Part shown: positions 1-46,722 of the stretch, piece after piece
How the letters are laid out: each line of letters starts with the position of its first letter
Numbering within the stretch: the first letter of the stretch is position 1
NCBI RefSeq assembly: GCF_046119375.1
Contig: NW_027362772.1
Span: 151,280,001-151,344,000, forward strand
Source of the DNA: Phyllobates terribilis
Lineage: Eukaryota
Length of the DNA: 64,000 nucleotides
Direction of reading: 5' to 3'
The notes under the pieces: model-generated
What the model saw: only the letters and a program-made list of their open reading frames with translations
What the model was told of the DNA's origin: nothing
Databases searched by the model: none
Program-made: the position numbers and the translations under genes

Positions 1-1526
1 ATTAATACATGTGGAATTATATACTTAACAAAAAAGTGTGAAACAACTGAAAATATGTCTTATATTCTAGGTTCTTCAAAGTAGCCACCTTTTGCTTTGA
101 TGACTGCTTTGCACACTCTTGGCATTCTCTTGATGAGCTTCAAGAGGTAGTCACCGGAAATGGTCTTCCAACAATCTTGAAGGAGTTCCCAGAGATGCTT
201 AGCACTTGTTGGCCCTTTTGCCTTCACTCTGCGGTCCAGCTCACCCCAAACCATCTCGATTGGGTTCAGGTCTGGTGACTGTGGAGGCCAGGTCATCTGG
301 CGTAGCACCCCATCACTCTCCTTCTTGGTCAAATAGCCCTTACACAGCCTGGAGGTGTGTTTGGGGTCATTGTCCTGTTGAAAAATAAATGATGATCCAA
401 CTAAACGCAAACCGGATGGAATAGCATGCCACCGCAAGATGCTGTGGTAGCCATGCTGGTTCAGTATGCCTTCAATTTTGAATAAATCCCCAACAGTGTC
501 ACCAGCAAAGCACCCCCACACCATCACACCTCCTCCTCCATGCTTCACGGTGGGAACCAGGCATGTAGAGTCCATCCGTTCACCTTTTCTGCGTCGCACA
601 AAGACACGGTGGTTGGAACCAAAGATCTCAAATTTGGACTCATCAGACCAAAGCACAGATTTCCACTGGTCTAATGTCCATTCCTTGTGTTCTTCAGCCC
701 AAACAAGTCTCTTCTGCTTGTTCCCTGTCCTTAGCAGTGGTTTCCTAGCAGCTATTTTACCATGAAGGCCTGCTGCACAAAGTCTCCTCTTAACAGTTGT
801 TGTAGAGATGTGTCAGCTGCTAGAACTCTGTGTGGCATTGACCTGGTCTCTAATCTGAGCTGCTGTTAACCTGCGATTTCTGAGGCTGGTGACTCGGATA
901 AACTTATCCTCAGAAGCAGAGGTGACTCTTGGTCTTCCTTTCCTGGGGCGGTCCTCATGTGAGCCAGTTTCTTTGTAGCGCTTGATGGTTTTTGCAACTG
1001 CACTTGGGGACACATTCAAAGTTTGCCCAATTTTTCGGACTGACTGACCTTCATTTCTTAAAGTAATGATGGCCACTCGTTTTTCTTTACTTAGCTGCTT
1101 TTTTCTTGCCATAATACAAATTCTAACAGTCTATTCAGTAGGACTATCAGCTGTGTATCCACCTGACTTCTGCGCAACACAACTGATGGTCCCAACCCCA
1201 TTTATAAGGCAAGAAATCCCACTTATTAAACCTGACAGGGCACACCTGTGAAGTGAAAACCATTTCCGGTGACTACCTCTTGAAGCTCATCAAGAGAATG
1301 CCAAGAGTGTGCAAAGCAGTCATCAAAGCAAAAGGTGGCTACTTTGACGAACCTAGAATATAAGACATATTTTCAGTTGTTTCACACTTTTTTGTTAAGT
1401 ATATAATTCCACATGTGTTAATTCATAGTTTTGATGCCTTCAGTGTGAATGTACAATTTTCAAAGTCATGAAAATACAGAAAAAAAATCTTTAAATGAGG
1501 TGTGTCCAAACTTTTGGTCTGTACGG
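1..1526 (-). mobile_element. Tc1/mariner transposon, family A, disrupted transposase; truncated by window start; lies in a TFPT intron
   Basis: ORFs 813-1112 (MARKKQLSKEKRVAIITLRNEG, paired-like HTH) and 60-656 (WSDESK, QQDNDPKH, SPDLNPIE). Long TIR: 1-170 is the reverse complement of about 1260-1430. Element ends at 1526 followed by TA. Confidence 0.93.
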
Positions 1527-2032
1527 TATATCATCATTGTAGGTTTCCTCAGAGTCAATTGATGATAATTAATTACTAAAACCCATACAAGTATCAATTT
1601 TTATTGCACCCATTTCTGTTGGTAAGGTGCTAGTGTCAAAAATATTCTAAAACATGATTAAGGGTACCGTGGATCCCAACATTATTATAGCAGTCTAATG
1701 CCCAAAATCTTAAGTTCAAGTGCCAAGCATTTATGCGCTGTAGAGATCTACTATACATCATGTCCTGTCAGCACCATTGCCTGAAGGAAACTATGTGAAA
1801 AAAGCAAAATGTAATTGCCTACAAAATATATTATGTTATCAGGGATAATGTCACTCGGTATAATAGTAGTTCTAGAGAGGGTACTCACATAGTTCAATTT
1901 GGCAGTCTGCAGGTGACATCAGCCCTATTGAGCCACTTAAAAAAAACAACTAAATTATATATTAGTAAATGATGAGTCGGGACTTATTGAAATGAAAGCA
2001 AGATGGCAGCAACAACATCGTCGTGTACGAAC

Positions 2033-2272
2033 CTGCTCAATTTCTTTGCAGCGGCGATTCAAGGCAAGGAACTTTCTCCTACTGAGCTCCCTCATGCGCT
2101 GCTGCGCCTCCTCTTCCTCCTCATCTTGTATGTTTTCGCCGCTCAGGCCTCCATCAACAAACTCAACCTCTGTCTCCAATTCACTTTCTAAAATATTACC
2201 TCCAAACAGAGGTGGAAGAGCGAGCTCCGATCCAGGGGGCACAGAAAACTCCTCGAAGTTTACAGCGGCCAT
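2033..2272 (-). CDS. TFPT: TCF3 fusion partner / INO80 subunit F, first coding exon (remaining exons lie left of the window)
   Basis: [39 protein letters not shown]...RRCKEIEQ matches recalled human TFPT ([39 protein letters not shown]). GT donor at 2032-2031; acceptor AG at 2284-2283 after a poly-T tract; head-to-head with PRPF31 as in human. Confidence 0.92.
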
Positions 2273-2475: not shown

Positions 2476-3695
2476 CCCCTTCGACCCTGGGTTTTTCCAT
2501 TTTTTTGTGTTTTCGTTTTTTGCTCCCCTTCTTCCCAGAGCCATGACTTTTTTATTTTTCAGTCAATATGGAAGTGCGAGGGCTTGTTTTCAGCGGGACG
2601 AGTTGTACGTTTGAACGACTCCATTGGTTTTACCATACTGTGTACTGGAAAACGGGAAAAAAATTCAAAGTGCGGTGAAATTGTAAAAAAGTGCAACTCC
2701 ACAATTGTTTTTTGTTTGTTTTTTTTACCACGTTCACTGAATGCGAAAACTGACCGGCCATTATTATTCTCCAGGTCATTATGAGTTCGTAGACACCAAA
2801 CATGTATAGGATCTTTTTTATTTAAGTGGTGAAAAAAAATCCAAAGTTTGTTTAAAAAAAAAAAAAAAAAAAGTCACAATTTTCTGAGACCCATGGCGTC
2901 TCCACTTTTCATGAGCTGGGGCCGGGTGAGGGCTTATTTTTTGCGTGCTGAACTGATGTTTTTATTGATACCATTTTGGGGTAGATCCGATGTTTTTATC
3001 GCCCGTTATTGCATTTTATTGCAATGTTGCGACGGCCAAAAAACAATTCTGGCGTTTTGATTCTTTTTCTCATTACGCCGTTTACCGATTGGATTAATTC
3101 TTTCTATATATTGATAGATCGGGCGTTTCTGAACTCGGTGATACCAAATATGTGTATATTTGATTTTTTTTTATTATTATTTTATTTTGAATGGGGCGAA
3201 ATGGGGGTGGTTTTAACTTTTAGATATTTTTTAATATTTTTAAAACATTTTTTTAATTTTTTTATTTACTTTTCATTGGCTTCAATAGTCTCCATGGGAA
3301 ACTAGAAGCTGCGATGATCAGGTCGCCTGGGTGTAGCAGAAATGCTCACTGGCTATGAGCGCTGACCGCTGGGTGGCACTCATAGCATCCCGGCAATGAC
3401 AACCACAGGGGTCTCCTGCACTCATCGGTGACCCATGGTCATGTGACATGGGCGGGACTTATGACGTCCTTCCGCCGCGGCCATGTTAAATGCTGCTATC
3501 AGAGTATGACAACGACGTTTAACATGTTAACAGCAGCGGGTGCATCACGATTCCACCCCCGGCTGTTAGGGGCACATGACAGCTGATCAGATCAGCTGTC
3601 ACATCCTCGGAAAGGAGCGGGCTCAGCTCCAGAGCTCGCATTTAGTGCAGTGTTAACACCTTGGACGTACTCATAAGTCCAAGTTTAGAAAGGGG
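2476..3695. mobile_element. piggyBac-like non-autonomous element in TFPT intron 1
   Basis: TTAA|CCCCTT at 2472-2481 and AAGGGG|TTAA at 3690-3699; no transposase ORF. Confidence 0.75.
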
Positions 3696-4424
3696 TTAAA
3701 GGGAATCTGTCAGCGGGATCTCACACCCCAAACGATTTATATGTGCATATAGCCCTTTAAAGACAAGTCCACCAATACTTTTACATGGCCAGTCCGCTCC
3801 TCTGTTACTGAGAAATCAGCATTTGAATTGATATGCAAATGAGGCTGAAGAGCTATAGTAGATCTGAAGCCTCAGTCATTCCAGCTCTATTTCCTCCTCT
3901 TGACTGACAGCCTCGAAACTGTGTGACTTCAGGCAAATCAAGGAATAGCACAAATATGTGCTCATTGTATGGTGACATGTCTTTTGGCCCGATGTGGCGC
4001 CATTATATCATCAGCAATAGGATATGTCCATGTAGGATGGCAGAATCCACCACTAATCTGCCTGTGGATCTTACTGCAGATTTCCGGTAATTACAGTGGA
4101 TTTGACCCCTCTCCCCCATATAGCCGGTAGCAGAACTCACTGCAGGTTTTACCTGTACAGATCCATGCGGAGAATCGTTATCATATACATCCTGTACGGA
4201 TCTACCCTTACTCTCCAAGAGCTACAATCCAAAAATACATATTTATGGGCTCACACATGCTGCACCAGTGTCAGATCTGCCTGCTTTTACACCGGAGAGG
4301 GCACTACTGCACAACCTGACACAAGTCCCTGCGATATACACGAGCAGCCTCATAGGTAGAATCCACCTCCACACATTACCCTGACATCACAGGACAAGAC
4401 CATGTCCTCCTCCTCCGCACCTAC

Positions 4425-4520
4425 CTGTTCACATTGTCTGTCCTTCTTCCCAAGCGCAGCGTGATATAAACACTACGACTGGTGTATACAAATAAAGTTA
4501 CACTATACAAAAAGGAGAAA
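4425..4520 (-). other. TFPT: Putative non-coding exon 1 of TFPT (5' boundary approximate)
   Basis: Strong minus-strand donor CAG|GTAGGT ending the exon at 4425, next to the CpG-rich promoter. Confidence 0.55.
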
Positions 4521-4529
4521 AAAAACATC

Positions 4530-4670
4530 AGCTGATCGACCAATGAAAGCATGCTTAGCGTTCGCGCGAGTACGCATGCGCATTTGCGGACCAATCGGAA
4601 AAACAGATAGCATTCCGGAAGCTGTCGCTGCAGTGACGTTGAATTTTCGCGCCACAACTTCCGGTTATAG
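4530..4670. promoter_or_regulatory. Bidirectional TFPT/PRPF31 promoter
   Basis: CpG-rich. NRF1-like ACGCATGCGCA 4572-4582, CCAAT 4540-4544 and 4591-4595, ETS/GABP-like TTCCGGAAG 4613-4621 and ACTTCCGG 4657-4664. Lies between oppositely oriented splice donors at 4425 and 4724. Confidence 0.75.
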
Positions 4671-4724
4671 TTGAAGAGAAGTGCAACAGCTTTCTGCCAC
4701 CTTTTTTCAGGCTTCTTGCACTTG
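4665..4724 (+). other. PRPF31: Putative non-coding exon 1 of PRPF31 (5' boundary approximate)
   Basis: Donor TTG|GTAAAT at 4724/4725. The first coding exon has an acceptor 9 nt before its ATG, so an upstream exon is required; human exon 1 is non-coding. Confidence 0.55.
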
Positions 4725-4810
4725 GTAAATGCTGCGCTGATGTCTGCGGGTGGGATGTGTGCCCGGAGTGTTAGCATGGGAGAATGTGGGGCGTACTTGG
4801 CTGGTGGTGT

Positions 4811-5648
4811 GCGGTGCCGCGCTGGTTATAGGACGCGTGCGGTGGTGCGGTGCCGCGCTGGTTATAGGACGTGTGCGGTGGTGCGGTGCCGCGCTGGTTA
4901 TAGGACGTGTGCGGTGGTGCGGTGCCGCGCTGGTTATAGGACGTGTGCGGTGGTGCGGTGCCGCGCTGGTTATAGGACGTGTGCGGTGGTGCGGTGCCGC
5001 GCTGGTTATAGGACGTGTGCGGTGGTGCGGTGCCGCGCTGGTTATAGGACGTGTGCGGTGGTGCGGTGCCGCGCTGGTTATAGGACGTGTGCGGTGGTGC
5101 GGTGCCGCGCTGGTTATAGGACGTGTGCGGTGGTGCGGTGCCGCGCTGGTTATAGGACGTGTGCGGTGCCGCGCTGGTTATAGGACGTGTGTGGTGGTGC
5201 GGTGCCGCGCTGGTTATGGGACGTGTGCGGTGCCGCGCTGGTTATGGGACGTGTGCGGTGCCGCGCTGGTTATGGGACGTGTGCGGTGCCGCGCTGGTTA
5301 TGGGACGTGTGCGGTGCCGCGCTGGTTATGGGGCGCGTGCGGTGCCGCGCTGGTTATGGGGCGCGTGCGGTGCCGCGCTGGTTATAGGACGCGTGCGGTG
5401 CCGCGCTGGTTATAGGACGCGTGCGGTGCCGCGCTGGTTGTAGGACGCGTGCGGTGCCGCGCTGGTTGTAGGACGCGTGCGGTGCCGCGCTGGTTGTAGG
5501 ACGCGTGCGGTGCCGCGCTGGTTGTAGGACGCGTGCGGTGCCGCGCTGGTTGTAGGACGCGTGCGGTGCCGCGCTGGTTATAGGACGCGTGCGGTGTGCG
5601 GTGCCGCGCTGGTTATAGGAAGGGTGCGGTGCCGCTCTGGTTATAGGG
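4811..5648 (+). repeat. GC/CpG-rich minisatellite, about 27 units of 36 bp or 28 bp, in PRPF31 intron 1
   Basis: Core GCGGTGCCGCGCTGGTTATAGGACGTGT (28 bp), with or without GCGGTGGT (36 bp); unit starts at 4811, 4847, 4883 ... 5099, 5135, 5163, 5199, then 28-bp period to 5590. Confidence 0.97.
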
Positions 5649-5793
5649 TTTCTATGTAACATAAAGCTGTATTATCTGGTGACTGATGTATTACTACATT
5701 TATGTCAATGAGGATATAGCGTTTTCTGTGAGTGAATTGCTGCTATAAAGCACAATCCTGCTATGAATTTGCCTTTTCCCGCAGGGATAAGAC

Positions 5794-5967
5794 ATGTCTC
5801 TGGCAGACGAGTTGCTGGCTGACCTGGAGGAGGCCGCAGAGGAAGAAGAGGACAACTTAATAGACGAGGATGACTTGGAGACCATTGAGGAAGTGCAGGA
5901 GGAGATGCAGGTGGATGTTAACGCTGAGTCAGTGAAAAGTATAGCAAAGTTATGGGACAGCAGACAG
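5794..5967 (+). CDS. PRPF31: PRPF31 (U4/U6.U5 tri-snRNP protein Prp31) exon 2, first coding exon
   Basis: MSLADELLADLEEAAEEEE...KSIAKLWDSRQ; acceptor AG 5783-5784, donor GTGAGT 5968. Joined CDS of 13 exons is 1497 nt, 498 aa. Confidence 0.98.
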
Positions 5968-6907
5968 GTGAGTGTCAGAAAACCCGAAAAACTCTTGTCA
6001 CATCTCCCAGCACTCCACGTCCTAATTTTTCTCCATTTTTGCTCTTGGTCACCATCACAAACAATATTCAGACACTAAGTAGTCTCAGAACAATCGTCGG
6101 CGATTCTCTCGCTGGTGTTGGTCAGGAGGCTAGTGGGAACAGACGCTCCTGATTAATAGGCACACGCAATGGATCAGGCAAGGCGCGTTGTGGTCTGCAC
6201 CTCTATGTGCTTGTGCTGGAATTAGATTTGTGGAGTAGCCAAAGATGACGCTCATCATGAATTTGACCAGCGGGGGTCGCCACGCTCCATCCTGCACAAG
6301 CTCTGCTCACTTTGTCAGATCTGGGGCATGAAAAATAGATGTCACCATGATTTACAGACTGCCTCGTCCCTCCAGTGGACATAACTGGGAAGTGGTAGAT
6401 GAGATGCTGCTCTACGTTATGTTAAAGCACCACTCCAGCGTGTTTTTGTTGTTTTTATCACTGGAGTGGTGCTTCTGGTCTAAGGACCATGCCTTAGTCT
6501 TATATTTACCTGCTGACATCTCGCCTATTTTCGCCTCTTTGGTCCGTCTCCTGCAGTTTGTGACTTGCCGGATCGCTCCAGTGTTTGCTGGGCGAGCCAC
6601 GGGCCACTTTTCAAGTAAGTCTGAGAGCCTTCTTCTGGCTCTCATATTCTTACATTGACCCTTTGTTATCGTTACCTCTGACTTTTGGTTGGTCAGAAGT
6701 TGTGGTCACAATATCCACACCACGAGGCTGGAGCTGCACCGATAAAAGGTGAAAATGGCAGCTGGTAAGTATAAGACTAAGGTCGGGGATCTTAGACCGT
6801 TCCTCTGTTCAACTGTGCAGAAAACCTATTTATTGAGCACCAACTTCTACATCCGTTCACTGCATAACAAAAAAAAAGAGTAATTTTATTAATATATATT
6901 TTTTTAG

Positions 6908-6968
6908 TTTTCAGACATTCTTGACAAGATCGATGAGTATGTCAAAAAACAACCAAAAGCATCTGAAG
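6908..6968 (+). CDS. PRPF31: PRPF31 exon 3
   Basis: FSDILDKIDEYVKKQPKASE, 61 nt, AG/GT flanks, phase consistent. Confidence 0.93.
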
Positions 6969-7560
6969 GTATAGTTCAGCATCATCATAAGTGGCTACCA
7001 TTCCAAAGCTCTTGTAAAAGCGAGCAAGTTTGCAACTTGCTTATTAAAGATGCTCTTCATTCTCAAGGACAGAGGAATTATTTTGGTTACTGGCCACTGC
7101 TGCAATGTCATTGGTGGCCGGTCTCCTAGACATGGTGTGCTGTACTTTCAAACTCTGTTCTATAGAGCCTGTAATCGCTCCTCTGAAGCTGGCCTGATTA
7201 CTGTAGTCTGCCACCTTCAGTGACTGCACTTTTCTGAAGCTGCAGAGGTAAAGCTGCTTCTCCTTGCAGCATCTTGGCGCACACAGTTCGTGCATGCAGT
7301 GCGATGATATTGGCTCAAACTGTCATCAAGCAGGAGGCCGGGGAGCGGCCGTGATCCTGCAGAAGAAACCGACAAAACTCGTTTATTCTTAGCCTGTGTT
7401 GTATTAGGAGGGGGATATAAGATTATACAGAAGTTTATTCCTCTCCAGATGTGATGGCATATTAAGACTTGCTGTCGCTTCCTGTTCAGATTGAGTTACA
7501 TTCTGATATAACGATTGTTTTATATCTTTGCATTATTGTGATTTATTTTCTGACTCGTAG

Positions 7561-7644
7561 TTATGGGACCTGTGGAAGCAGCACCTGAGTATAAAGTGAT
7601 TGTCGATGCAAACAATTTGACTGTGGAAATAGAAAATGAATTAA
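7561..7644 (+). CDS. PRPF31: PRPF31 exon 4
   Basis: (V)MGPVEAAPEYKVIVDANNLTVEIENEL, 84 nt, AG/GTAAGT. Confidence 0.97.
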
Positions 7645-7766
7645 GTAAGTTTGTCAAGGTGGACTATAAAATGGATTTAAGAGATGAAGCCACAAATTTA
7701 AATATTTTGCTCATAAATTAACAGTACTAGTGAAGATTAAAAAAGAAAAAAACTTGGTAATATATA

Positions 7767-9255
7767 CACTGCTCAAAAAAATAAAGGGAACATTTAACAA
7801 CAGAATATAACTCCAAGTAAATCAAACTTCTGTGAAACCAAACTGTTCACGTAGGAAGCCACACTGATTGACAATCAATTTCACATGCTGTTGTGCAAAT
7901 GGAATAGACAATAGATGGAAATTATTGGCAATTATCAAGACACCCTCAATAAAGGAGTGGTTCTGCAGGTGGGGACCACAGACCACATCTCACATCTGGC
8001 TGATGTTTTGGTCACTTTTGAATGTTGGTTGTTCTTTCACACTCGTGGTAACATGAGATGGACTCTACAACCCACAGAAGTTGCTAAGGTAGTGCAGCTC
8101 ATCCAGGATGGCACATCAGTGCGAGCTGTGGCAAGAAGGTTTGCTGTGTCTGTCAGCGTAGTGTCCAGAGGCTGGAGGCGCTACCAGGATACAGGCCAGT
8201 ACACCAGGAGATGTGGAAGGGGCTGTAGGAGGGCAACAACCCAGCAGCAGGACCGCTACCTCCGCCTTTGTGCAAGGAAGAACAGGAGGAGCACTGCCAG
8301 AGCCCTGCAAAATGACCACCAGCTGGCCACAAATGTGCATGTGTCTGCACAAACGGTTAGAAACCGACTCCATTAGGGTGGTATGAGGGCCCGACGTCCA
8401 CAGATGGGGGTTGTGCTCACAGTCCAACACCGTGCAGGACGCTTGGCATTTGCCACAGAACACCAGGATTGGCAAAGTTGCCACTGGCGCCCTGTTCTCT
8501 TCACAGATGAAAGCAGGTTCACACTGAGCACATGTGACAGAGTCTGGAGACGCTATGAAGAGCGATCTGCTGCCTGCAACATCCTTCAGCATGACCGGTT
8601 TGGCAGTGGGTCAGTAATGGTGTGGGGTGGCATTTCTTTGGAGGGCCGCACAGCCCTCCATGTGCTTGCCGGAGGTAACCTGACTGCCATTAGGTACCGA
8701 GATGAGATCCTCAGACCCCTTGTGAGACCATATGCTGGTGCGGTTGGCCCTGGGTTCCTCCTAATGCAGGACAATGCCAGACCTCATGTGGCTGGAGTGT
8801 GTCAGCAGTTCCTGCAAGATGAAGGCATTGAAGCTATGGACTGGCCCGCCCGTTCCCCAGACCTGAATCCGATTGAGCACATCTGGGACATCTTGTCTCG
8901 CTCCATCCACCAACGTCACACCATCCACAACCTCATCAAGAGTATGCCCAGGCATTGTAGGGAGGTCATACAGGCACGTGGAGGCCACACACAATACTGA
9001 GCCTCATTTTGACTTGTTTTAAGGACATTACATCAAAGTTGGATCAGCCTGTAGTGTGTTTTTTCCACTTTAATTTTGGGGGTGACTCCAAATCCAGGCC
9101 TCCATTGGTTAATAAATTTGATTTCCGTTGATGATTTTTTTGTGATTTTGTTGTCAGCACATTCAACTTTGTACAGAACAAAGTATTCAATGAGAATATT
9201 TCATTCATTCAGATCTAGGATGTTAGTTGTGTTCCCTTTATTTTTTTGAGCAGTG
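7767..9255 (+). mobile_element. Tc1 transposon, family C, copy 1, disrupted transposase
   Basis: TA|CACTGCTCAAAAAAATAAAGGGAAC ... GAGCAGTG|TA. Transposase from 8053 with in-frame TAG at 8374-8376; [23 protein letters not shown] in 8383-9000. Confidence 0.93.
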
Positions 9256-12223: not shown

Positions 12224-13377
12224 TTAATGTTGATGATTATGGCTTACAGTCAATGAAAACACAATCATTATCTCAGTAAATTAGAATACTTTATAACAAC
12301 AGCTTGAAAAATTATTGTAAAATCTGAAATGTTATCCTACTGAAATGTATGTTCAGTAAATGCCCTCAATACTTGGTCGGGCTCCTTTTGCATCAATTAC
12401 TGCATCAATGTGGCATGGAGGCGATCAGCCTGTGGCACTGCTGAGGTGTTATGGAAGCCCAGGTTGCTTTGATAGCAGCCTTCAGCTCGTCTGCATTGCT
12501 GGGTCTGGGGTCCCTCATCTTCCTCTTGACGATACCCCATAGATTCTCTATAATAGATTCTCTATGGGGTTAAGGTCAGGCGAGTTTGCTGGCCAATCAA
12601 GCACAGTGATACTGTTGTTAGTAAACCAGGTATTGGTACTTTTGGCAGTGTGAACAGGTGCCAAGTCCTGCTGGAGAATGACATTTCCATCTCCAAAAGC
12701 ATGAAGTGCTTTAAAATGTCCTGGTAGACGGCTGCGCTGACTTTGGTCTTGATAAAACACAGTGGCCCTACACCAGCAGATGTCATGGCTCCCCAAACCA
12801 TCACTGATTGTGGAAACTTCACACTAGACCTCAAGCAGCTTGGATTGTGGCCTCTCCACTCTTCCTCCAGACTCTGGGACCTTGATTTCCATATGAAAAT
12901 TGGAACTCTGGGACCTTGTGGAGTGTGTCAATGACTGCCTTCTGGACATCTGTCAAGTCAGCAGTCTTCCCCCATGATTGTGGAGCCAACTGAAACAGTA
13001 TATGGGACCATTTTAAACACTTAAGAAGCCTTTGCAGGTGATTTTTGTTAATTAGTCTAATTTACTGAGATAATGACTTTTGTGTTTTCATTGGCTGTAA
13101 GCCATAATCATCAACATTAACAGAAATAAACACTTGAAATAGATCACTCTGTGTGTAATGACTCTATATAATATATGAGTTTCACTTTTTGTATTGAAGA
13201 ACTGAAATAAATTAACTTTTTGATGATATTCTAATTTTATGAGATGCACCTGTATGTCTACAAATCTGTCTGCAGCTATGGATAAAATTTACTCCTGTTT
13301 ATATAACCCTTATGGAAAAGGGAGGGAGAGAAACTGAAGGGGAACAATAGAAAGGTTGTGGCTTCAAGAGCAGGGAG

Positions 13378-13408
<31 letters not shown>

Positions 13409-13499
13409 CGGGATAGAAGTAATGTAATGGGCAGAAAGTGTTTTTCCATCGTGTGCACATGATGGCTTATTCTGGGCGGTCAGATGTGCAGCCTATTAA

Positions 13500-13904
13500 A
13501 GGGGTTATCCATGAATATTTTTTTTTTTTTTTTTAAACTACAGGCCTCAGAACTAACAGGCAAGTAGTTGCTTACTGTGCCCAGTTCTGATCTCTGCCAG
13601 TATAGACCGCTCCTGCGAGCGATTCAGTGGCTTCCACTGATGTCAAGTCAGCAGACCAGCAGCATCTTTTCTTCTCTGGTCTGACGTCATGCTGATTGAC
13701 AGCTGGCTCCCCGCTGCCTAACTGCAGGGAGCTGATGGTCAATCAGCATGATGTGGGCAGTTACACCAAGTCACCAGAGCAGAAGAAGAGCTGCTTTGTT
13801 GATGTTAAGCAGCTGGATCCACGCCTGGAAGAACAGACAGGTAGTTGCCTCTGTTAGTTTTTAGACCCATAGTTTAAAAAAAAAAATGGTCCTGGACAAA
13901 CCCT
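13500..13904. mobile_element. Kolobok/T2-type MITE
   Basis: TTAA|AGGGGTTATCCA ... TGGACAAACCCT|TTAA. Confidence 0.65.
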
Positions 13905-13983
13905 TTAATTTTCTCATTACAACGAGATGCATCCTCAAGTTTAGCAAAACTGTTTTGTAAATTATTCTCTTTTATTTATTTAG

Positions 13984-14081
13984 ATATTATCCACAAGTTT
14001 ATCAGAGACAAGTATTCAAAGCGGTTTCCTGAGCTGGAGTCTCTGGTTCCTAATGCCTTGGACTACATAAGAACAGTGAAG
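13984..14081 (+). CDS. PRPF31: PRPF31 exon 5
   Basis: (N)IIHKFIRDKYSKRFPELESLVPNALDYIRTVK, 98 nt. Confidence 0.98.
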
Positions 14082-14567
14082 GTAGGTGGTGAGGCCGTAT
14101 GTGCTGTGTAATGTGAAGGGGCAAAAAATTGCACTTTTCCGTGGTTCACTTTTGCGGGAGCTAAATTCAGATGTATGTAAATAGACTGCAGTGCCTGGAC
14201 CAACAACGGGGCCTCTGAGCCTAATAGCATCATGTGTACCAAAGAGATGAATATTCCCCAATATATCACATCTTATTCAGCATCAAATAGCAAATAACAA
14301 GAGCTTGTATTAAAAACAGCAAACAGTGGTGTAATAGAAGATTGGTCAGACATGTCATAAGCTAAGGGTAGATCAATCTAAATTAATAAGTGAGTGATAG
14401 CAGGCATCTCGTGTAAAAATACTTTAGCAGTAACTAAAACGTATATATATCCTCACTAGGTCCCTATGTACAGTATCATACAATTCATACTCGGAGGATA
14501 TAACACAGTGCCAATAGCAATGTTTTCTTATAAGTCGTCAAAATAATCCTATACCAGAAACTCTTAA

Positions 14568-14882
14568 AAGGGTTGTCCAGGTTAGGGATGTGATTGCAGA
14601 CTTTTGAATCCTGATAGCGTGCGCTCTGCATGCACGGGCAGCGAGAGCGGGCGATAGCATGACGGCAAGTATACAATTTGCATACGTGCTGTCACGTGCC
14701 GACTAGATGAATTTACTTGGATTGACTGAGGCCGTGCACATCTAGTCTGAATTTGGCAGGAAGTATGTGAATTGTATACTGGCAGTCTTGTGACTGCCTG
14801 TTCTCACCGCCGTCACTACATGCTCTCAGGATTCAAAAGTCCTAGTGATTGCAGACTTTAATCCCACACCTGGACAACCCCT
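14568..14882. mobile_element. Kolobok/T2-type foldback MITE
   Basis: TTAA|AAGGGTTGTCCAGGT ... ACCTGGACAACCCCT|TTAA with internal inverted arms. Confidence 0.7.
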
Positions 14883-15735
14883 TTAAGATTATATTAAGGA
14901 TGTATATTGGTGGGCCTATAAAGATGATCAATCTAAGCCTACCTCCATCACCACATTACAGCCAGCGTCTCAGACTGTATGACTCTGGTGCACCAACCAC
15001 AGACGCCTTGAAGCATAATATTTTTTAGTCCTGCTACTTCAGGAGGTCACATATGCCTTTTGAAGGTGTTATTTCAGGTCAGGAGACCATGATCCGTCCA
15101 GACATGGCAGTCCTTATAGAGACCGTGAAATACGACGTCTACGGACTTTTCCAATACATATTACAGTAGCAATGTTGTAAATTATATTTCTTGAAATCTC
15201 ATTCACATGGTGAGGGATGTCAGCAAAGCGTGAAACGTGCGTAAAATCTGCTCATTTTCCACTACAAATTGTAAATAAATAAATTGCAAATAAGTATTTG
15301 CAAAAATTGTAACATCCCTTTTAAAGGGTTATTCCCAAAATATGAAGTTCGCTTCAATCGATAGAACAGAGGGATAATTTGCTGATCGTTGGGACCCCTG
15401 TGGATCCTGGGAACCCCATCCTGAATGGAGTGGAGGTGCACATGTGTGGCCTCCGCGCCATTCATTGTTCATGGGACTGCCGGAAACAGCCGAGCGCAGT
15501 ACTCTGCAGTCCCATAGACAATGACGGCTCACCACTGAAAACAAAGAGTTAATGAAGCTCACCACGCCGGTAAATCCTTCCGAGGGTGCCGGTTAACCTC
15601 TGCTTTTTTTTTTTAGGACGGGGCTGCAGAATAAATCTATTTATAACCTTCCACAACATTGTATGAAAGCTGATATTCGTGTCTGAGCAGTTGACTTTGC
15701 ATCTAACATAAACCTAATTTACGATTATTTTTCAG

Positions 15736-15842
15736 GAGTTGGGAAACAATCTGGATAAATGTAAGAATAATGAGAATCTTCAGCAGATTCTGACCAATGC
15801 CACCATCATGGTTGTGAGTGTGACGGCCTCCACTACACAGGG
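15736..15842 (+). CDS. PRPF31: PRPF31 exon 6
   Basis: ELGNNLDKCKNNENLQQILTNATIMVVSVTASTTQ(G), 107 nt. Confidence 0.98.
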
Positions 15843-15929
15843 GTAAGCCCGTACACACGCACCGTGTTTTCTGTATCCCCATGCTGTGCTTTCTGATCGC
15901 CTTTCCTGGTATTTGCGGTTTATATACAG

Positions 15930-16099
15930 ACAGCAGCTGACATGTGAGGAATTGGAACGCATTGAAGAAGCGTGTGACATGGCGCTGGAGCTGAACCAGT
16001 CCAAACACCGCATCTATGAGTACGTGGAGTCCCGCATGTCCTTCATCGCTCCCAATCTCTCCATCATTGTTGGGGCCTCAACTGCAGCCAAGATAATGG
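15930..16099 (+). CDS. PRPF31: PRPF31 exon 7
   Basis: QQLTCEELERIEEACDMALELNQSKHRIYEYVESRMSFIAPNLSIIVGASTAAKIM, 170 nt. Confidence 0.98.
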
Positions 16100-16236
16100 G
16101 TAATATGTGAAGCTTATTGTCCTGTACTACTTTTCCATTATCCATGTAAGCACATGCGAGCAGTACACAAATGGAAGTAGATATGCAGCACTTTATGGTC
16201 TTAGGTGTACTAACATCACAACCTTGTCCTTTCCAG

Positions 16237-16394
16237 GTGTAGCTGGTGGTCTTACAAACCTCTCTAAGATGCCTGCCTGCAATGTGATGCTCCTGGGAGC
16301 TCAGAGGAAAACCTTATCTGGCTTTTCTAGCACTTCTGTCCTTCCTCATACAGGTTACATTTACCACAGTGACATCGTCCAGTTATTGCCCTCG
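16237..16394 (+). CDS. PRPF31: PRPF31 exon 8 (Nop domain)
   Basis: (G)VAGGLTNLSKMPACNVMLLGAQRKTLSGFSSTSVLPHTGYIYHSDIVQLLPS, 158 nt. Confidence 0.98.
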
Positions 16395-16470
16395 GTAAGC
16401 AATGGAAACCTTTCTGTGCTAGAACTGTAGTGGCCAAGGCTGAACATATTTTGCCTTCATGTAATTTTAG

Positions 16471-16560
16471 GACTTGCATCGAAAGGCAGCACGATTGGTG
16501 TCTGCAAAGTGCACCTTGGCAGCGCGAGTAGACAGCTTTCATGAGAGCACAGAGGGAAAG
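16471..16560 (+). CDS. PRPF31: PRPF31 exon 9 (Nop domain)
   Basis: DLHRKAARLVSAKCTLAARVDSFHESTEGK, 90 nt. Confidence 0.97.
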
Positions 16561-16749
16561 GTTTGTATTAGAGGGACTTACTACTCATATATAGACCCCT
16601 GTCCTTGGTTACATCCATGTAATATAGCAGGGAAGGTATAACGGACTCTTGTAATGCTGGACGCGCCATCTGATTATAGTTTGTGACTTGCTGTCAGACT
16701 ATAATAGTTGTGCCTCTGTACCCTCGTGTGTCATATATAAAATTATATA

Positions 16750-17925
16750 CAGGTGCATCTCACTAAATTAGAATATCATCAAAAAGTTAATTGATTTCGG
16801 TTCTTCAATACAAAAAGTGAAACTCATATATTATATAGAGTCATTACAAACAGAGTGATCTATTTCACGTGTTTATTTCTGTTAATGTTGATGATTATGG
16901 CCAATAAAAACACAAAAGTCATCTCAGTAAATTAGAATAATTAACAAAAAAACACCTGCAAAGGCTTCTGAAGCGTTTAAAAAGGTCCCTTAGTCTGTTT
17001 CAGTAGGCTCCACAATCATGGGAAAGACTGCTGACTTGACAGATATCCAGAAGGCAGTCATTGACACACTCCACAAGGTCCCAGAGTTCCAATTTTCATT
17101 TGGAAATCACGGTCCCAGAGTCTGGAGGAAGAGTGGAGAGACCACAATCCAAGCTGCTTGAGGTCTAGTGTGAAGTTTCCACAATCGGTGATGGTTTGGG
17201 GAGCCATGTCATCTGCTGGTGTAGGTCCACTGTGTTTTATCAAGACCAAAGTCAGCGCAGCCGTCTACCAGGACATTTTAGAGCACTTCATGCTTCCCTC
17301 TGCTGACAAGCTTTTTGGAGATGGAAATGTCATTCTCCAGCAGGACTTGGCCCCTGTCCACACTGCCAAAAGTACCAATACCTGGTTTATATACAACAGT
17401 ATCACTGTGCTTGATTGGCCAGCAAACTCACCTGACCTTAACCCCATAGAGAATCTATTATAGAGAATCTATGGGGTATTGTCAAGAGGAAGATGAGGGA
17501 CCCCAGACCCAGCAATGCAGACGAGCTGAAGGCTGCTATCAAAGCCACCTGGGCTTCCATAACACCTCAGCAGTGCCACAGGCTGATCGCCTCCATGCCA
17601 CGTCACATTGATGCAGTAATTGATGCAAAAGGAGGCCCGACCAAGTATTGAGGGCATTTACTGAACATACATTTCAGTAGGATAACATTTTGGATTTTAA
17701 AAACCTTTTTCAAGCTGTTGTTATAAAGTATTCTAATTTACTGAGATAATGACTTTTGTGTTTTCATTGGCTGTAAGCCATAATCATCAACATTAACAGA
17801 AATAAACACTTGAAATAGATCACTCTGTTTGTAATGACTCTATATAATATAGGAGTTTCTCTTTTTGTATTGAACTGAAATAAATTAACTTTTTGATGAT
17901 ATTCTAATTTAGTGAGAAGCACCTG
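16750..17925 (+). mobile_element. Internally deleted Tc1 element, family B, copy 2 (intron 9)
   Basis: TA|CAGGTGCATCTCACTAAATTAG ... AGTGAGAAGCACCTG|TA; ~200-bp TIRs; transposase remnant 17158-17463 (QQDLAPVH, WPANSPDLNPIE). Confidence 0.92.
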
Positions 17926-23099: not shown

Positions 23100-24660
23100 C
23101 ACTGCTCAAAAAAAAATAAAGGGAACACTTAAACAACAGAATATAACTCCAAGTAAATCAAACTTCTGTGAAATCAAACTGTCCACTTAGGAAGCAACAC
23201 TGATTGACAATCAATTTCACAAGCTGTTGTGCAAATGGAATAGACAATAGATGGAAATTATTGGCAATTATCAAGACACTCAATAAAGGAGTGGTTCTGC
23301 AGGTGGGGACCACAGACCACATCTCAGTACCAATGCTTTCTGGCTGATGTTTTGGTCACTTTTGAATGTGGTTGTGCTTTCACACTCGTGGTAGCATGAG
23401 ACGGACTCTACAACCCACAGAAGTGCTCAGGTAGTGCAGCTCATTCAGGATGGCACATCAATGCGAGCTGTGGCAAGAAGGTTTGCTGTGTCTGTCAGCG
23501 TAGTGTCCAGAGGCTGGAGGCGCAACCAGCAGACAGGCCAGTACACCAGAAGACGTGGAGGGGGCCGTAGGAGGTCAACAACCCAGCAGCAGGACCGCTA
23601 CCTCCGCCTTTGTGCAAGGAAAAACAGGAGGAGCACTGCCAGAGCCCTGCAAAATGACCTCCAGCCGGCCACAAATGTGCATGTGTCTGCACAAACGGTT
23701 AGAAACCGACTCCATGAGGGTGGTATGAGGGCCCGACGTCCACAGATGGGGGTTGTGCTCACAGCCCAACACCGTGCAGGACGCTTGGCATTTGCCACAG
23801 AACACCAGGATTGGCAAAGTCGCCACTGGCGCCCTGTGCTCTTCACAGATGAAAGCAGGTTCACACTGAGCACATGTGACAGAGTCTGGAGACGCTATGA
23901 AGAGCGATCTGCTGCCTGCAACATCCTTCAGCATGACCGGTTTGGCAGTGGGTCAGTAATGGTGTGGGGTGGCATTTCTTTGGAGGGCCGCACAGCCCTC
24001 CATGTGTTCGCCAGAGGTAGCCTGACTGCCATTAGGTACCGAGATGAGATCCTCAGACCCCTTGTGAGACCATATGCTGGTACGGGGCCCTGGGTTCCTC
24101 CTAATGCAGGACAATGCCAGACCTCATGTGGCTGGAGTGTGTCAGCAGTTCCTGCAAGATGAAGGCATTGAAGCTATGGACTGGCTCTTCCGTTCCCCAG
24201 ACCTGAATCCGATTGAGCACATCTGGGACATCATGTCTCGCTCCATCCACCAGCGTCACACCACAGACTGTCCAGGAGTTGGAGGATGCTTTAGTCCAGG
24301 TCTGGGAGGAGATCCCACAGGAGACCATCCGCAACCTCATCAGGAGCATGCCCAGGTGTTGTAGGAAGGTCATACAGGCACGTGGAGGCCACACACAATA
24401 CTGAGCCTCATTTTGACTTGTTTTAAGGACATTACACCAAAGTTGGATCAGCCTGTAGGGTTTTTCCACTTTAATTTTGGGGGTGACTCCAAATCCAGGC
24501 CTCCATTGGTTAATAAATTTGATTTCCATTGATGATTTTTGTGTGATTTTGTTGTCAGGACATTCAACTTTGTACAGAGCAAAGTATTCAATGAGAATAT
24601 TTCATTCATTCAGATCTAGGATGTGTTATTTCAGTGTTCCCTTTATTTTTTTGAGCAGTG
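23100..24660 (+). mobile_element. Tc1 transposon, family C, copy 2, frameshifted transposase
   Basis: TA|CACTGCTCAAAAAAAAATAAAGGGAAC ... GAGCAGTG|TA; ORFs 23434-24162 and 24074-24364 split by a frameshift near 24080. Confidence 0.93.
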
Positions 24661-27600
24661 TATTTAAGTGTTTATATCCTATGCTTTAAATGATCAATTA
24701 AAGGTTACATTTTAAGAATTTTTCTAATGTACAATAATTACGGTGAGTTTGATCATGGAGAGGGACCGTCCAACTTGTCATCGAGGAGAGGGACTGTCCA
24801 GCTTGTTATCAGCACATAGTTCTGTATCTCTGATTTTATGGGGTTGATTAGTGCTGAGCAGCTGCACAAGAAAGGTGCTATCCATCTAAATACTGACATC
24901 AGACAGCCCCATACACATGCATGCTCGGCTCTACTATATAATTCTTTATAGTTGATTATCAATCTTCCTATATAAGGCAGAGGTCATGAAATTGTGGTTT
25001 GGGAACTACACAATTTAGTTACTTATCATACTGGGAGGATTTATTTATTTTCTCTATCGCTTCATTGGGGGACACAGGAAACCATGGGAGTATGCTGCCA
25101 CCACTAGGAGGCTGACAGTAGGCAGAAAAAAGTAGCTCCTCCCCAGCAGTGTACACCCCACGACTAGCACTAAGTTAATCAGTTTTAGCTTAGTGTCAGT
25201 AGGAGGTGGACACAGGTCTTCCACTAGACCCAGATCTACCTTGGTTTTTGGCGTTTTTCAGTAATTTTTTCCCTTTTCCAGAAGGTTCCTCTTCTGTCCC
25301 TGGGAGGAAGCAGTGTGAAGAGTCACTTTGTTGTCCCATGTAGAGACAATGAGTACGGCGTGGACTGCCACCTCGTATCCTCATCTGTCTATCGGGCAGG
25401 ACCCCCAGCCGCTAACACATCAAGAGTGTTCAGGAGATCTGAAGAATGGTCCTGGCCCCCCACTCCTGCCCGCCTGCCCTCCAGAGCCAGATGGTTTCAG
25501 GAGGTACAGACGTCGTGCAATCGGAGTTGCCCCCTTGATGGTGAGGTCTGGGTGTCTGATCGTATTTCTGAAACCTGTTCAGGGACGAAGAGGTAACCCC
25601 ATTTTTTCTACATGTTCCCCTCCCTGTTCCCGGGAGGTGAGAAGAAGATCCGCACAACAGATGGATGTAACAGGGGCTCTTGATTAGTATTTTTGACATA
25701 TGTGTGCGGCTGTTTATTAACTATGTCTGAATGTGTTTGCGAGTCTGGTCCAGCCATAAGGCCTGTTCTTCACCTTCGTTTTAGTCCTCTGCGCACCTCC
25801 CGCCTCTCTGCCTACTTTGGGGTCACAGTCTGTGGGACCTAGCCGCGGTGTTTGGCTCCACCCACTCTTCCTCATCGCGCGGGCTTTTTCTCTGCCCTGC
25901 GCAGACACGCCCCCTCAGTGTCGCGGGAAACTGTTTGCCCTTTTCTCTTAGAAAGCCGCCTCTTCCTTCCCGTGGTCACCTTTTTCCGGCACCTGGACTT
26001 CCAGCATCTCCGGAGCCTCTCCGGCCAGCCTTCTTGACCCCTCAACACCGCAAGACCCTGCAATCAATTTGCGGGTCCACATCTCTCCTGTAGGTAAGCT
26101 CTGCTCTGCAGACTGTAGCTCTCCTCAGCAATTGCTCTTTTCTGTCCCCTAACCTCTGACATTAGTGAGTGAGTCTGTCCACCTTCTGTCATGTCTAATT
26201 CTAAAGGAGAGCACTCCCACCCTCTTGCCTCTACTATTCTTCGCAAGCATTTTGTTTGCTCTTCTTGTAAGTGCAGACTCCCTTCAGGGCAGGCTTCTTC
26301 CCTCTCTCAGGATTGCAGCAATCCCTCCATCCTCACTACCCAGGAGTCCTCTGCCGGTTCCGAAGAGAGTGGCCCCCGTATCCCACCGTGGGCTACTTCT
26401 CGGTCTCAAGCCGTTGCAGATTTTACCAAGGTGTCTCAGACCCTGGTATCCGTGCTGGATGGATTGCCTATCCCCCATCACACTGCTGGTGGTGGATCCC
26501 AGGACCCACCCTTACCTCCTTCCACAGTTACCACCAATGGCTGTAAGAGGGCTAGGAGGGAGAATTGCTCCAGATCTTCCTGTCACTCCTTGTACTCCCA
26601 TGGCCCCATCTCGGCGGCTGGTTTCTTCTCGATTCATCCTACGTAGACACGTCAGCGGATCTGGGTTCCGAAGCTAATTCGGACCTGGACTCTGACCAGA
26701 CTTCTAACATGAGAGACATGGTTGAGAGTCTTATTGTAGCGATCAATCAGACCCTTAATATCAAGGATACCCTACGAAGCCTGCAAAACAGGTGTTGTCC
26801 TTCAGATGGACAAGACAAGCTCCTTGAGTTTTCGCTCCCCCTACAGAATTTGTAGGGGGCCTTAGCAGAGAGTGGGAAAACCCTACCAGACGCTTCAAGA
26901 GAAGGAAGAGTCTTGGCATCCTGTATCCCTTTGCCTCAGATCTCACTGAAAATTGGACTGTTCCTCCAGCTGTGGACTCCCCAGTCTCCAGACTATCCAC
27001 CAACATGGTCCTTCCCGTTACGGACGGGTCTTCACTCAGGGACTCCAATGACAGACTCATGGAGTCCTTTGTCAAGTCAGCCTTTGAAGCATCAGGTTCT
27101 ACCCCATGCCCTGCGTTTGCCACCACATGGGTGTCAAAGTCGATATCTGCATGGGATAAGCAACTCCGTCAGGGCATCCTTGCGAGAGCCGCGCCTGATG
27201 AGTTAGCTGACCAGATCTCACAAGCAGGAAAATATTTAGTGGTCACCTCCTTGGATGCCGCCTCCTGTGCAGTTCAAGCGTCCAGTAATATAGTGGCCAT
27301 CTGCAGAACCATCTGGCTAAAGGCGTGGCAAGCAGACTTGCCTTCCAAGAAGTCTCTGACCAGTCTGCCATTCCAGGGATCACAACTGTTTGGAAACAGA
27401 TTATAATGGAGGCCACTGGGGGGAAAAGCTCTCTTCTTCATCAGGCCAAACCTTGGCATCCTCCTTCTAAGTGAAAAGTTCGTCCCTTTCATCCTTTTCG
27501 CCACTTCTTGTCTGGGGAAGACTCGTCCTGCTAGGAGAGGCCATAGGCAAGACAGGAAAAGAGAAAGCCCTCTTTCTAACTGACACCCTCCTGGCATCCT

Positions 27601-46692: not shown

Positions 46693-46722
46693 GCAGTACT
46701 GGCGTCTACCACTAGATGGCGG
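46693..46722 (+). promoter_or_regulatory. CTCF-like site with upstream module
   Basis: Core CCACTAGATGGCGG 46709-46722 preceded by GCAGTAC at 46693-46699. Confidence 0.55.

What the first reader, a model, noticed from the sequence alone, without database searches (positions are those of the whole stretch)
4811..5648. 36/28-bp CpG minisatellite at the PRPF31 start: possible convergent analogue of human MSR1
Seen: an 840-bp array of about 27 units starts only ~87 bp after the putative exon 1 donor and fills ~80% of intron 1. It carries several CpGs per unit and a G/T-rich sense strand. Known: copy number of the 36-38-bp MSR1 minisatellite near the human PRPF31 promoter tunes expression, and the gene is haploinsufficient (RP11). 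Inference: this VNTR could be an independently evolved dosage dial for a core spliceosomal gene, acting through methylation, R-loops/G4, TF multimerisation or intron 1 splicing. The similar unit length is an analogy; I see no evidence of homology with MSR1.
Basis: partly seen in the sequence, partly recalled or inferred. Interest (0 to 1): 0.7.

Follow-up and report, generated by a model that had tools for sequence, protein, structure and literature searches.

The report
CpG-rich minisatellite in frog PRPF31 intron 1
A real 840-bp, CpG-rich tandem repeat fills most of the first intron of a frog's PRPF31 splicing-factor gene and differs between samples, but it looks like an ordinary promoter-side repeat, and nothing shows that it tunes the gene as the unrelated human MSR1 repeat is reported to.

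Summary
At 4809-5647 there are 27 head-to-tail units: 36 bp in the 5' half and 28 bp in the 3' half, differing by an 8-bp internal duplication.

- **Composition:** 126 CpGs (o/e 1.50), 70% G+T on the sense strand.
- **Position:** an RNA-like contig joins 4724 to 5785 (GT..AG). Intron 1 is therefore 4725-5784, the array starts 84 nt after the donor, fills 79% of the intron and is spliced out.
- **Gene:** exon 2 matches residues 1-58 of human Prp31.
- **Authenticity:** contigs from three other runs enter the array from both unique flanks, so it is not an assembly artefact. Their 3'-terminal units and unit variants differ from the window, so the array is structurally variable.
- **Copy level:** summed contig depth fits one low-copy locus, not a dispersed satellite.

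The dosage-dial reading is untested, and the MSR1 analogy is thin. MSR1 lies about 630 bp upstream, has 3-4 copies, is not CpG-island-like and is mammal-specific. I found no canonical G4 motif, no CTCF motif and no strong decoy donor.

Best reading: a young, local, near-neutral VNTR that extends the promoter CpG island and G-skew about 0.9 kb into the gene. Notes from this scan report several similar promoter-side minisatellites elsewhere in this genome. Interest is low to moderate.

The parts
4809..5647 (+). Whole minisatellite array, 27 units, 126 CpGs, sense strand G/T-rich
   Evidence: TRF; unit parse; 26 matches against 0 expected; composition
4813..5200 (+). 5' sub-array: ten 36-bp units (28-bp core plus a tandem 8-bp GTGCGGTG duplication) and one 28-bp unit (unit 10). 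Eight units are identical.
5201..5564 (+). 3' sub-array: thirteen 28-bp units in contiguous variant blocks (TTATGGGACGTG x4, TTATGGGGCGCG x2, TTATAGGACGCG x2, TTGTAGGACGCG x5)
5565..5655 (+). Irregular 3' end: a 35-bp unit (7-bp duplication), an AAGGG variant unit and a degenerate terminal unit. This part differs in runs X4, X9 and X12, which have 10 other letters and 36-bp-type units next to the terminal unit.
   Evidence: joints 4920/5136/4884 to 5637, table 5c
4636..4724 (+). PRPF31 non-coding exon 1, at least this extent. The RNA-like contig ends at 4636 next to adapter letters, so the true start site may lie further upstream.
   Evidence: record 15, joint 4723/5784, loose end at 4636
4725..5784 (+). 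PRPF31 intron 1, 1060 nt, GT..AG. No RNA-contig depth over the array.
   Evidence: tables 2 and 5
5785..5967 (+). PRPF31 exon 2 with the start codon at 5794
4500..4635 (.). Core of the promoter between the two diverging genes: CCAAT at 4540 and 4591, NRF1-like GCATGCGC at 4574, ETS cores at 4615 and 4658, TGACGT at 4634, E2F-like at 4561 and 4646. CpG o/e is 1.2-1.4 but GC is only 0.47. These are consensus matches only.
4425..4508 (-). Probable first exon of the diverging TFPT-like gene: RNA-like contig depth here, and a consensus donor CAG|GTAGGT on the minus strand at 4425/4424. The extent is inferred; no joint was seen because the next exon lies outside the laid stretch.
   Evidence: bin 4408-4508, place 4468; sequence read
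1955..2272 (-). Coding exon of the TFPT/INO80F-like neighbour ([25 protein letters not shown]...). The name rests on a weak atlas lead and my own recognition.
   Evidence: no Pfam or PDB match

Best explanation
This is a young, single-locus, lineage-restricted GC-rich VNTR. It arose in place by replication slippage and unequal exchange in the middle of PRPF31 intron 1, beside the shared promoter of PRPF31 and a TFPT-like gene. It is transcribed as part of the pre-mRNA and removed by normal splicing. It carries no recognisable factor-site array. The sequence shows one physical consequence: it supplies 126 of the 144 CpGs of the promoter CpG-island-like stretch, and it adds an 840-bp tract of strong G-skew co-oriented with transcription. 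The frog PRPF31 start therefore resembles a 'long-skew' CpG-island promoter. If the array does anything, I infer that it extends the non-methylated, R-loop-prone, CXXC-protein-binding zone downstream of the start site, so that length changes would alter the size of that zone rather than the number of specific binding sites. I judge it most likely a near-neutral by-product of promoter-centred instability. Frogs appear to lack PRDM9. In vertebrates without PRDM9, recombination targets promoter-like features. In Xenopus, tandem repeats track recombination. Shown here: existence, position, splicing, composition, low copy number and structural differences between samples. Inferred: the origin mechanism, the unmethylated state, R-loop formation, and any effect on expression.
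For: - **Array and unit structure:**. There are 11 unit types among 27 units, laid out in contiguous blocks, and eight units are identical. The 36-bp unit is the 28-bp unit plus an 8-bp tandem duplication, and a separate 7-bp duplication sits in unit 25. This is the signature of local slippage and unequal exchange.
- **Sharp edges:** the intron flanks match the unit no better than shuffled flanks do. There are no inverted repeats or terminal repeats in 4400-6000.
- **Single low-copy locus:** in run X4 the array bins have summed contig depth 3-422 against about 187 for the unique flanks and 32,000-93,000 for the transposon-like bins at 3700-3900. The RNA-like run X13 has no depth on the array. 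The unit occurs nowhere else in the window. The 221-aa ORF that the array happens to encode has no protein relatives.
- **Splicing:** the 4724|5785 joint is GT..AG. The array has no GGTRAG and no AGGT.
- **Structural variation:** contigs of X4, X9 and X12 reach the 3' flank through 10 other letters and 36-bp-type units, where the window has its 28-bp and AAGGG units. X9 has no depth on the 28-bp CGCG/TTGT variants, while X12 has much. Unit-length variants absent from the window occur (5 letters left out at 5132, GGG put in at 5164).
- **CpG and skew:**
- **Literature:** GC skew downstream of start sites goes with R-loops and the unmethylated state (PMC3787257). Common VNTRs are enriched at start sites and CpG islands (PMC8096271). 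No PRDM9 was found in amphibians, and recombination without PRDM9 targets promoter-like features (PMC5519329). In X. tropicalis, tandem repeats correlate with recombination and unequal crossing-over is proposed as the driver (PMC10794172).
- **A more distant frog:** L001 (exon 2 82.7% identical in DNA) shows no GC-rich repeat in the 380 bp upstream of its exon 2.
Against: - No methylation, R-loop, chromatin or expression data were available, so the functional half is inference.
- Only assembled contigs could be laid, not reads, so neither the window's copy number nor that of the other samples is measured. The depth ratios (about 6x, 10-25x and 50-60x the flanks in X4, X9 and X12) are not copy numbers.
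- The array occurs in runs labelled as three organisms, so it may be older, and perhaps more constrained, than 'young and neutral' implies.
- CpG o/e of 1.5 maintained across 27 units is what either recent homogenisation or protection from germline methylation would give. These cannot be told apart here.
- The genome-wide absence of the unit was not tested directly.
Confidence: 0.62

Rival explanations
1. Dosage dial: array length, acting through the size of the unmethylated or R-loop-prone zone or through multimerised factor sites, sets how much PRPF31 (and perhaps the diverging TFPT-like gene) is transcribed. Length variation gives heritable expression variation, a functional analogue of human MSR1.
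For: The array occupies +90 to +930 relative to the exon 1 donor region, inside the CpG-island-like stretch. It differs in structure between samples. Its strong co-oriented G-skew of +0.29 to +0.44 is of the kind linked to R-loops and protection from methylation (PMC3787257). In humans, MSR1 clusters in promoters or first introns go with more variable expression, and 3 versus 4 copies changes PRPF31 reporter output (PMC4725990). The clinical association was replicated (PMC8535263, PMC9956082). A first-intron VNTR with an expression association is known (DPYSL4; PMC8096271).
Against: There are no expression, methylation or reporter data. No canonical G4 motif, no CTCF motif, no identified specific factor site. 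The single-strand fold is no better than shuffles. Promoter-side minisatellites are reported often in this genome (unchecked notes), so position alone is weak evidence. With 27 or more units, one unit more or less is a small relative change, unlike 3 versus 4 in humans. A more distant frog shows no such repeat near exon 2.
Confidence: 0.15
2. Dispersed or transposon-derived satellite: the unit belongs to a family spread through the genome, as several other minisatellites of this genome are reported to be, and this copy merely landed and expanded in PRPF31 intron 1.
For: Scan notes describe Helitron- and transposon-derived minisatellites beside promoters in the same genome (unchecked). X12 shows high depth on several unit variants.
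Against: Array depth in X4 is of the order of the unique flanks, 100 to 1000 times below the transposon-like bins. No transcripts carry the unit in X13. Both flanks are unique and lack terminal or inverted repeats. There is no other copy in the 64 kb, no look-alike in the scan's other windows (a blank there means little) and no related ORF in the protein collection.
Confidence: 0.08
3. Assembly artefact: the array, or its length and internal order, was created or distorted by the assembler.
For: Long, near-perfect repeats are error-prone in assembly. No run holds more than 46% of the stretch's sampled words. No contig spans the array.
Against: Independent contigs from three runs enter the array from both unique flanks, and unit k-mers sit at several-fold to tens-of-fold the flank depth. 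The ordered variant blocks are typical of real arrays. Existence is therefore secure; only the exact count of 27 is unverified.
Confidence: 0.05

Closest known systems
Human MSR1 minisatellite cluster beside the PRPF31/TFPT promoter (Rose et al. 2016, PMC4725990)
   Same: It is a minisatellite with a unit of about 36 bp, within 1 kb of the PRPF31 start site, next to a promoter apparently shared with a TFPT-like gene, and it varies between samples.
   Different: The human cluster is about 630 bp upstream of the start site rather than in intron 1. It has 3 or 4 copies rather than about 27. It is stated not to be CpG-island-like, whereas the frog array has CpG o/e 1.5. It belongs to a dispersed family densest on chromosome 19q that arose after the bird-mammal split, whereas the frog unit looks single-locus. 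Regulatory activity is shown for MSR1 and for nothing here. I did not align the two units because no tool supplied an MSR1 sequence.
Promoter- and first-intron VNTRs associated with expression in humans (Eslami Rasekh et al. 2021, PMC8096271; e.g. the DPYSL4 first-intron VNTR, the CSTB upstream repeat)
   Same: A GC-rich minisatellite inside or next to a CpG island and start site; this class is known to be enriched there and often polymorphic.
   Different: Those loci have population genotypes and expression associations. This one has only structural differences seen in contigs.
GC-skewed 'Class I, long-skew' CpG-island promoters prone to R-loops (Ginno et al. 2013, PMC3787257)
   Same: More than 700 bp of positive GC skew co-oriented with transcription, starting just after the start site and running through exon 1 into intron 1, with high CpG density.
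   Different: Here the skew and CpGs are supplied almost wholly by one tandem repeat in a frog, not by unique sequence. R-loops and methylation state were not measured.
Other promoter-side minisatellites noted in this same genome (scan notes s1-225787 TERF2 intron 1, s1-215402 ZNF promoter, s1-230093, s1-196806)
   Same: Arrays of 0.7-1.8 kb built from units of a few tens of bp, lying in first introns or between diverging promoters.
   Different: Several of those carry strong CTCF-like motifs or derive from transposons. This array has no CTCF motif and no sign of transposon origin.

Membership tests
MSR1 minisatellite family (human/mammalian) | Unit of 36-38 bp | tested here: inconclusive
   Ten units are 36 bp, but fifteen are 28 bp; the 36-bp form is the 28-bp core plus an 8-bp duplication.
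MSR1 minisatellite family (human/mammalian) | Sequence similarity to the MSR1 consensus | not tested
   No tool supplied an MSR1 sequence, and the paper gives the consensus only as a figure.
MSR1 minisatellite family (human/mammalian) | Dispersed family with many clusters; arose after the bird-mammal split | tested here: not met
   The frog unit is found only at this locus in the window and at low-copy depth. A frog lies outside the stated taxonomic range (PMC4725990).
MSR1 minisatellite family (human/mammalian) | Not CpG-island-like | tested here: not met
   Array CpG o/e is 1.50 and GC 0.68, whereas the paper states that MSR1 does not behave as a CpG island.
Minisatellite / VNTR | Head-to-tail units of about 10-100 bp | tested here: met
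   27 units of 28-36 bp, 93-94% matches.
Minisatellite / VNTR | Copy number or internal structure varies between individuals | tested here: inconclusive
   The 3'-end structure and unit variants differ in contigs of X4, X9 and X12. Copy numbers cannot be read from contigs, and the samples carry three organism labels.
CpG island / non-methylated island | Length over 200 bp, GC at least 0.5, CpG o/e at least 0.6, at a start site | tested here: met
   4561-5740: 1180 bp, GC 0.62, o/e 1.42, 144 CpGs; the strongest such stretch in the window.
CpG island / non-methylated island | Unmethylated in vivo | not testable with these tools
   No bisulfite or methylation-aware reads were available. In frogs, sequence-based prediction is a poor guide to non-methylated islands (PMC3583005).
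R-loop-prone GC-skewed promoter (Class I) | Positive GC skew co-oriented with transcription, downstream of the start site | tested here: met
   GC skew is +0.29 to +0.44 from 4700 to 5700 on the sense strand.
R-loop-prone GC-skewed promoter (Class I) | RNA:DNA hybrids detected | not testable with these tools
   This needs DRIP-type data.
G-quadruplex-forming repeat | Four runs of at least 3 G with loops of 1-7 | tested here: not met
   0 matches in the array; only 1 with G2 runs and loops of 1-7.
CTCF-motif minisatellite (seen elsewhere in this genome) | CTCF core motif in most units | tested here: not met
   No match to CCASYAGRKGGCRSY at up to 2 mismatches inside 4809-5647.
Expression-modifying VNTR | Gene expression depends on allele length | not testable with these tools
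   No genotype-expression data or reporter data.

The most novel reading that the evidence does not exclude
The array is a lineage-specific, length-variable, repeat-built extension of the PRPF31 CpG island. Its size sets the extent of the unmethylated, R-loop-prone zone and thereby PRPF31 (and perhaps TFPT) output. That would be an independent, mechanistically different solution to the dosage tuning that MSR1 copy number is reported to give in humans. It might also be one instance of a genome-wide class of promoter minisatellites generated by promoter-centred recombination in frogs, which appear to lack PRDM9.
Probability: 0.1. Interest if true: 0.55.

Novelty: new member of a known kind. Interest (0 to 1): 0.25.

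Why it matters
PRPF31 is dosage-sensitive in humans, and a nearby minisatellite is the best-supported cis modifier of disease penetrance. A frog array with a proven effect would therefore be a striking case of convergent repeat-based tuning, and a tractable model for how repeat length shapes a CpG island. As it stands, the locus mainly shows two things. GC-rich minisatellites can make up most of a promoter's CpG island in a frog genome. And such arrays turn over quickly between samples. The broader question is whether promoter-side minisatellites are systematically produced in genomes without PRDM9. That is worth a genome-wide census more than this single locus is.

Tried and rejected
- **G-quadruplex route:** no canonical motif.
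- **CTCF-site array, as at other first-intron minisatellites of this genome:** no motif in the array.
- **Hairpin or slipped-strand propensity:** single-stranded DNA folds of three to four units are no better than shuffles on either strand (z -0.8 to +1.0).
- **Transposon origin:** no inverted repeats or terminal repeats, and both flanks are unique.
- **Older degenerate units in the flanks:** flank-to-unit alignment scores equal the shuffle scores.
- **Known RNA families in 3000-8000:** none.
- **Protein relatives of the repeat-encoded ORF:** none.
- **Orthologous intron 1 from other frogs:** the exon-2 ORF search found only one other frog (91% amino-acid identity) on contigs shorter than 1 kb. 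Only exon 2 is alignable. This shows no repeat within 380 bp of its exon 2, but it cannot show absence from the whole intron.
- **Mammal-like hits (P0007-P0009 and the like):** I did not follow these, to stay clear of human-like contigs.
- **TFPT identity of the upstream ORF:** no Pfam or PDB match, only a weak atlas lead to INO80F / TCF3-fusion-partner-like clusters (score 0.82-0.84).
- **Alignment to MSR1:** left out because I had no referenced sequence.
- **Short motif counts in the unit (TGYGGT x38, ACGTG x14, GCGTG x11, CGCG x37):** I give these no weight. Any 28-bp unit contains some 5-6-mer matches, and the copies are not independent.

Full report
**What is there**

Tandem Repeats Finder reports one large array at 4809-5647, seen both as a 36-bp period (12 copies, 94% matches) and as a 28-bp period (25.9 copies, 93% matches). 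Splitting on the anchor GGTGCCGC gives 27 units:
- units 1-9 and 11 are 36 bp;
- units 10, 12-24 and 26 are 28 bp;
- unit 25 is 35 bp;
- unit 27 is a degenerate terminal unit.

The 36-bp form is the 28-bp core plus a tandem copy of the 8-mer GTGCGGTG. Unit 25 carries a separate 7-bp duplication.

There are 11 unit types, arranged in contiguous blocks: eight identical 36-mers, then runs of four, two, two and five 28-mers that differ by single transitions. That block pattern is what local slippage and unequal exchange produce. A 23-mer of the unit matches 26 times against 0 expected, and nowhere else in the 64 kb.

The array has 126 CpGs in 839 bp (o/e 1.50, GC 0.68). Its sense strand is 70% G+T, with GC skew of +0.29 to +0.44.

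**Gene context**

Exon 2 (5785-5967, ATG at 5794) translates to MSLADELLADLEE.... It aligns to residues 1-58 of human Prp31 in solved tri-snRNP structures (E 1.3e-14). A later exon matches the Prp31 Nop domain (E 4e-28). The gene is PRPF31.

I had one read-laying run, and all four runs were held as assembled contigs. An RNA-like run (X13) gave a 299-nt contig that joins 4724 to 5785, skipping 1060 nt with GT..AG ends. Its 5' end lies at 4636, next to adapter letters, and it has no depth over the array. From this:
- exon 1 is at least 4636-4724;
- intron 1 is 4725-5784;
- the array begins 84 nt after the donor, ends 137 nt before the acceptor and fills 79% of the intron;
- the array is removed by normal splicing.

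It contains no GGTRAG donor and no AGGT.

Upstream, 4500-4635 holds consensus matches typical of a housekeeping promoter: two CCAAT boxes, an NRF1-like core, two ETS cores, TGACGT and E2F-like sites.

On the minus strand there is RNA-like depth at 4408-4508 and a consensus donor at 4425/4424. A coding exon at 1955-2272 looks like TFPT/INO80F. That name rests only on a weak atlas lead and my own recognition, because Pfam and PDB gave nothing.

**Real, low-copy and variable**

Contigs of three DNA-like runs enter the array from both unique flanks. The runs are X4, X9 and X12, which carry three organism labels and come from two studies. The array is therefore not an assembly artefact. No contig spans it, so the count of 27 is unverified.

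In X4 the summed contig depth on array bins is 3-422. The unique flanks sit at about 187, and the transposon-like stretch at 3700-3900 sits at 32,000-93,000. The RNA-like run has no depth on the array. That fits one low-copy locus rather than a dispersed satellite. The repeat-encoded ORF has no protein relatives, and the flanks show no inverted repeats and no unit-like remnants.

The other samples carry a different array allele:
- their contigs reach the 3' flank through ten other letters and 36-bp-type units, where the window has 28-bp and AAGGG units;
- X9 has no depth on the 28-bp CGCG/TTGT variants, while X12 has much;
- unit-length variants absent from the window occur.

These three runs also share about 2-3% differences from the window in the flanks, whereas X13 is identical to the window in exons 1-2. 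The comparison may therefore be between deep haplotypes, or between close species despite the labels.

A more distant frog was found through the exon-2 ORF (91% amino-acid identity). Only exon 2 is alignable (82.7% DNA identity). The 380 bp upstream of its exon 2 are AT-rich with no such repeat. That is suggestive of lineage restriction, but it is not proof.

**How it most likely works**

The sequence shows directly that the array supplies 126 of the 144 CpGs of the CpG-island-like stretch 4561-5740, which is the strongest in the window. The native promoter core has CpG o/e of 1.2-1.4 but GC of only 0.47. The array also supplies more than 800 bp of G-skew co-oriented with transcription.

In human promoters, such long skew tracts go with R-loops and with an unmethylated state running through exon 1 into intron 1 (PMC3787257). 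I therefore infer that any effect would come from extending the unmethylated, R-loop-prone zone, not from specific factor sites. I found no canonical G4 motif, no CTCF motif and no unusual single-strand fold.

For origin, I infer promoter-centred instability:
- PRDM9 was not found in amphibians, and recombination without it targets promoter-like features (PMC5519329);
- in Xenopus tropicalis, tandem arrays cover 10.67% of the chromosomes and track recombination, with unequal crossing-over proposed as the driver (PMC10794172).

Unchecked notes of this scan list many promoter-side minisatellites in this same genome. I put about 0.6 on a near-neutral local VNTR and about 0.15 on a measurable dosage effect.

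**Comparison with MSR1**

Three versus four MSR1 copies change PRPF31 reporter output, and the 4-copy allele goes with non-penetrance (PMC4725990). This was replicated, with the caveat that it is not the sole determinant (PMC8535263, PMC9956082).

The resemblance to the frog array is limited to unit length and neighbourhood. MSR1 differs in four ways:
- it lies about 630 bp upstream of the start site;
- it has 3-4 copies;
- it is stated not to be CpG-island-like;
- it is a dispersed family that arose after the bird-mammal split.

The frog array fails the testable membership features. I did not align the units, because no tool supplied an MSR1 sequence. Common human VNTRs are enriched at start sites and CpG islands (PMC8096271). 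A minisatellite near PRPF31 in two lineages is therefore not a surprising coincidence.

**Limits**

- Only contigs could be laid, so starts, strand, copy number and expression level are not measured.
- I left the mammal-like hits alone.
- Read laying did not refuse any part of the stretch.

**Verdict**

This is a new member of a known kind, a promoter-proximal GC-rich VNTR, of low to moderate interest.

Noticed in passing
window 4314-4764 and 5637-6569: There are two deep haplotype classes. Contigs of X4, X9 and X12 share the same 2-3% differences from the window, with 12 of them packed into 4549-4697 (promoter core and exon 1). Several are at CpGs, including the E2F-like TTCGCGC at 4646. The RNA-like run X13 matches the window exactly in exons 1-2. 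The cause could be deep polymorphism, cryptic species or labelling.
   Followed up: partly
window 6242-6286: In X4 and X9, 43 letters of intron 2 are replaced by 12 others (tables 5 and 5c): an indel difference between haplotypes.
   Followed up: no
window 3700-3900 and 6530-6600: High-copy dispersed repeats. Summed contig depth is 10^4-10^5 in X4 against about 187 for unique sequence, and they are also abundant in the RNA-like run.
   Followed up: no
window 60-1112(-), 8383-9000(+), 23434-24404(+), 54551-55582(-), 62449-63405(+): Five Tc1/mariner-type transposase ORFs or remnants. The copy at 54551-55582 is an open 343-aa ORF. The inverted pair of Tc1 derivatives at 12224-17925 that brackets PRPF31 exons is already noted by the scan (s1-232609).
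   Followed up: no
window 25300-29400: Retroelement pol-like ORFs spread over several frames (a YLDD-containing ORF at 27967-28434), so the element appears broken. I describe it only.
   Followed up: no
window 46381-47680: A second CpG-island-like stretch (1300 bp, o/e 0.83) with a perfect CTCF-core match at 46709 and small 37-39-bp tandem repeats at 46716-46879. An 82-bp x3.5 repeat lies at 48178-48464. I recognised no gene there.
   Followed up: partly
L002 1-420 versus L001 1-385: Two contigs of another frog (runs SRR32027901 and SRR32027905) are identical from about 55 bp upstream of the PRPF31 ATG onwards and unrelated further upstream. L002 carries a 139-aa ORF there. This is either an insertion polymorphism or an assembly-graph mis-join.
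   Followed up: no
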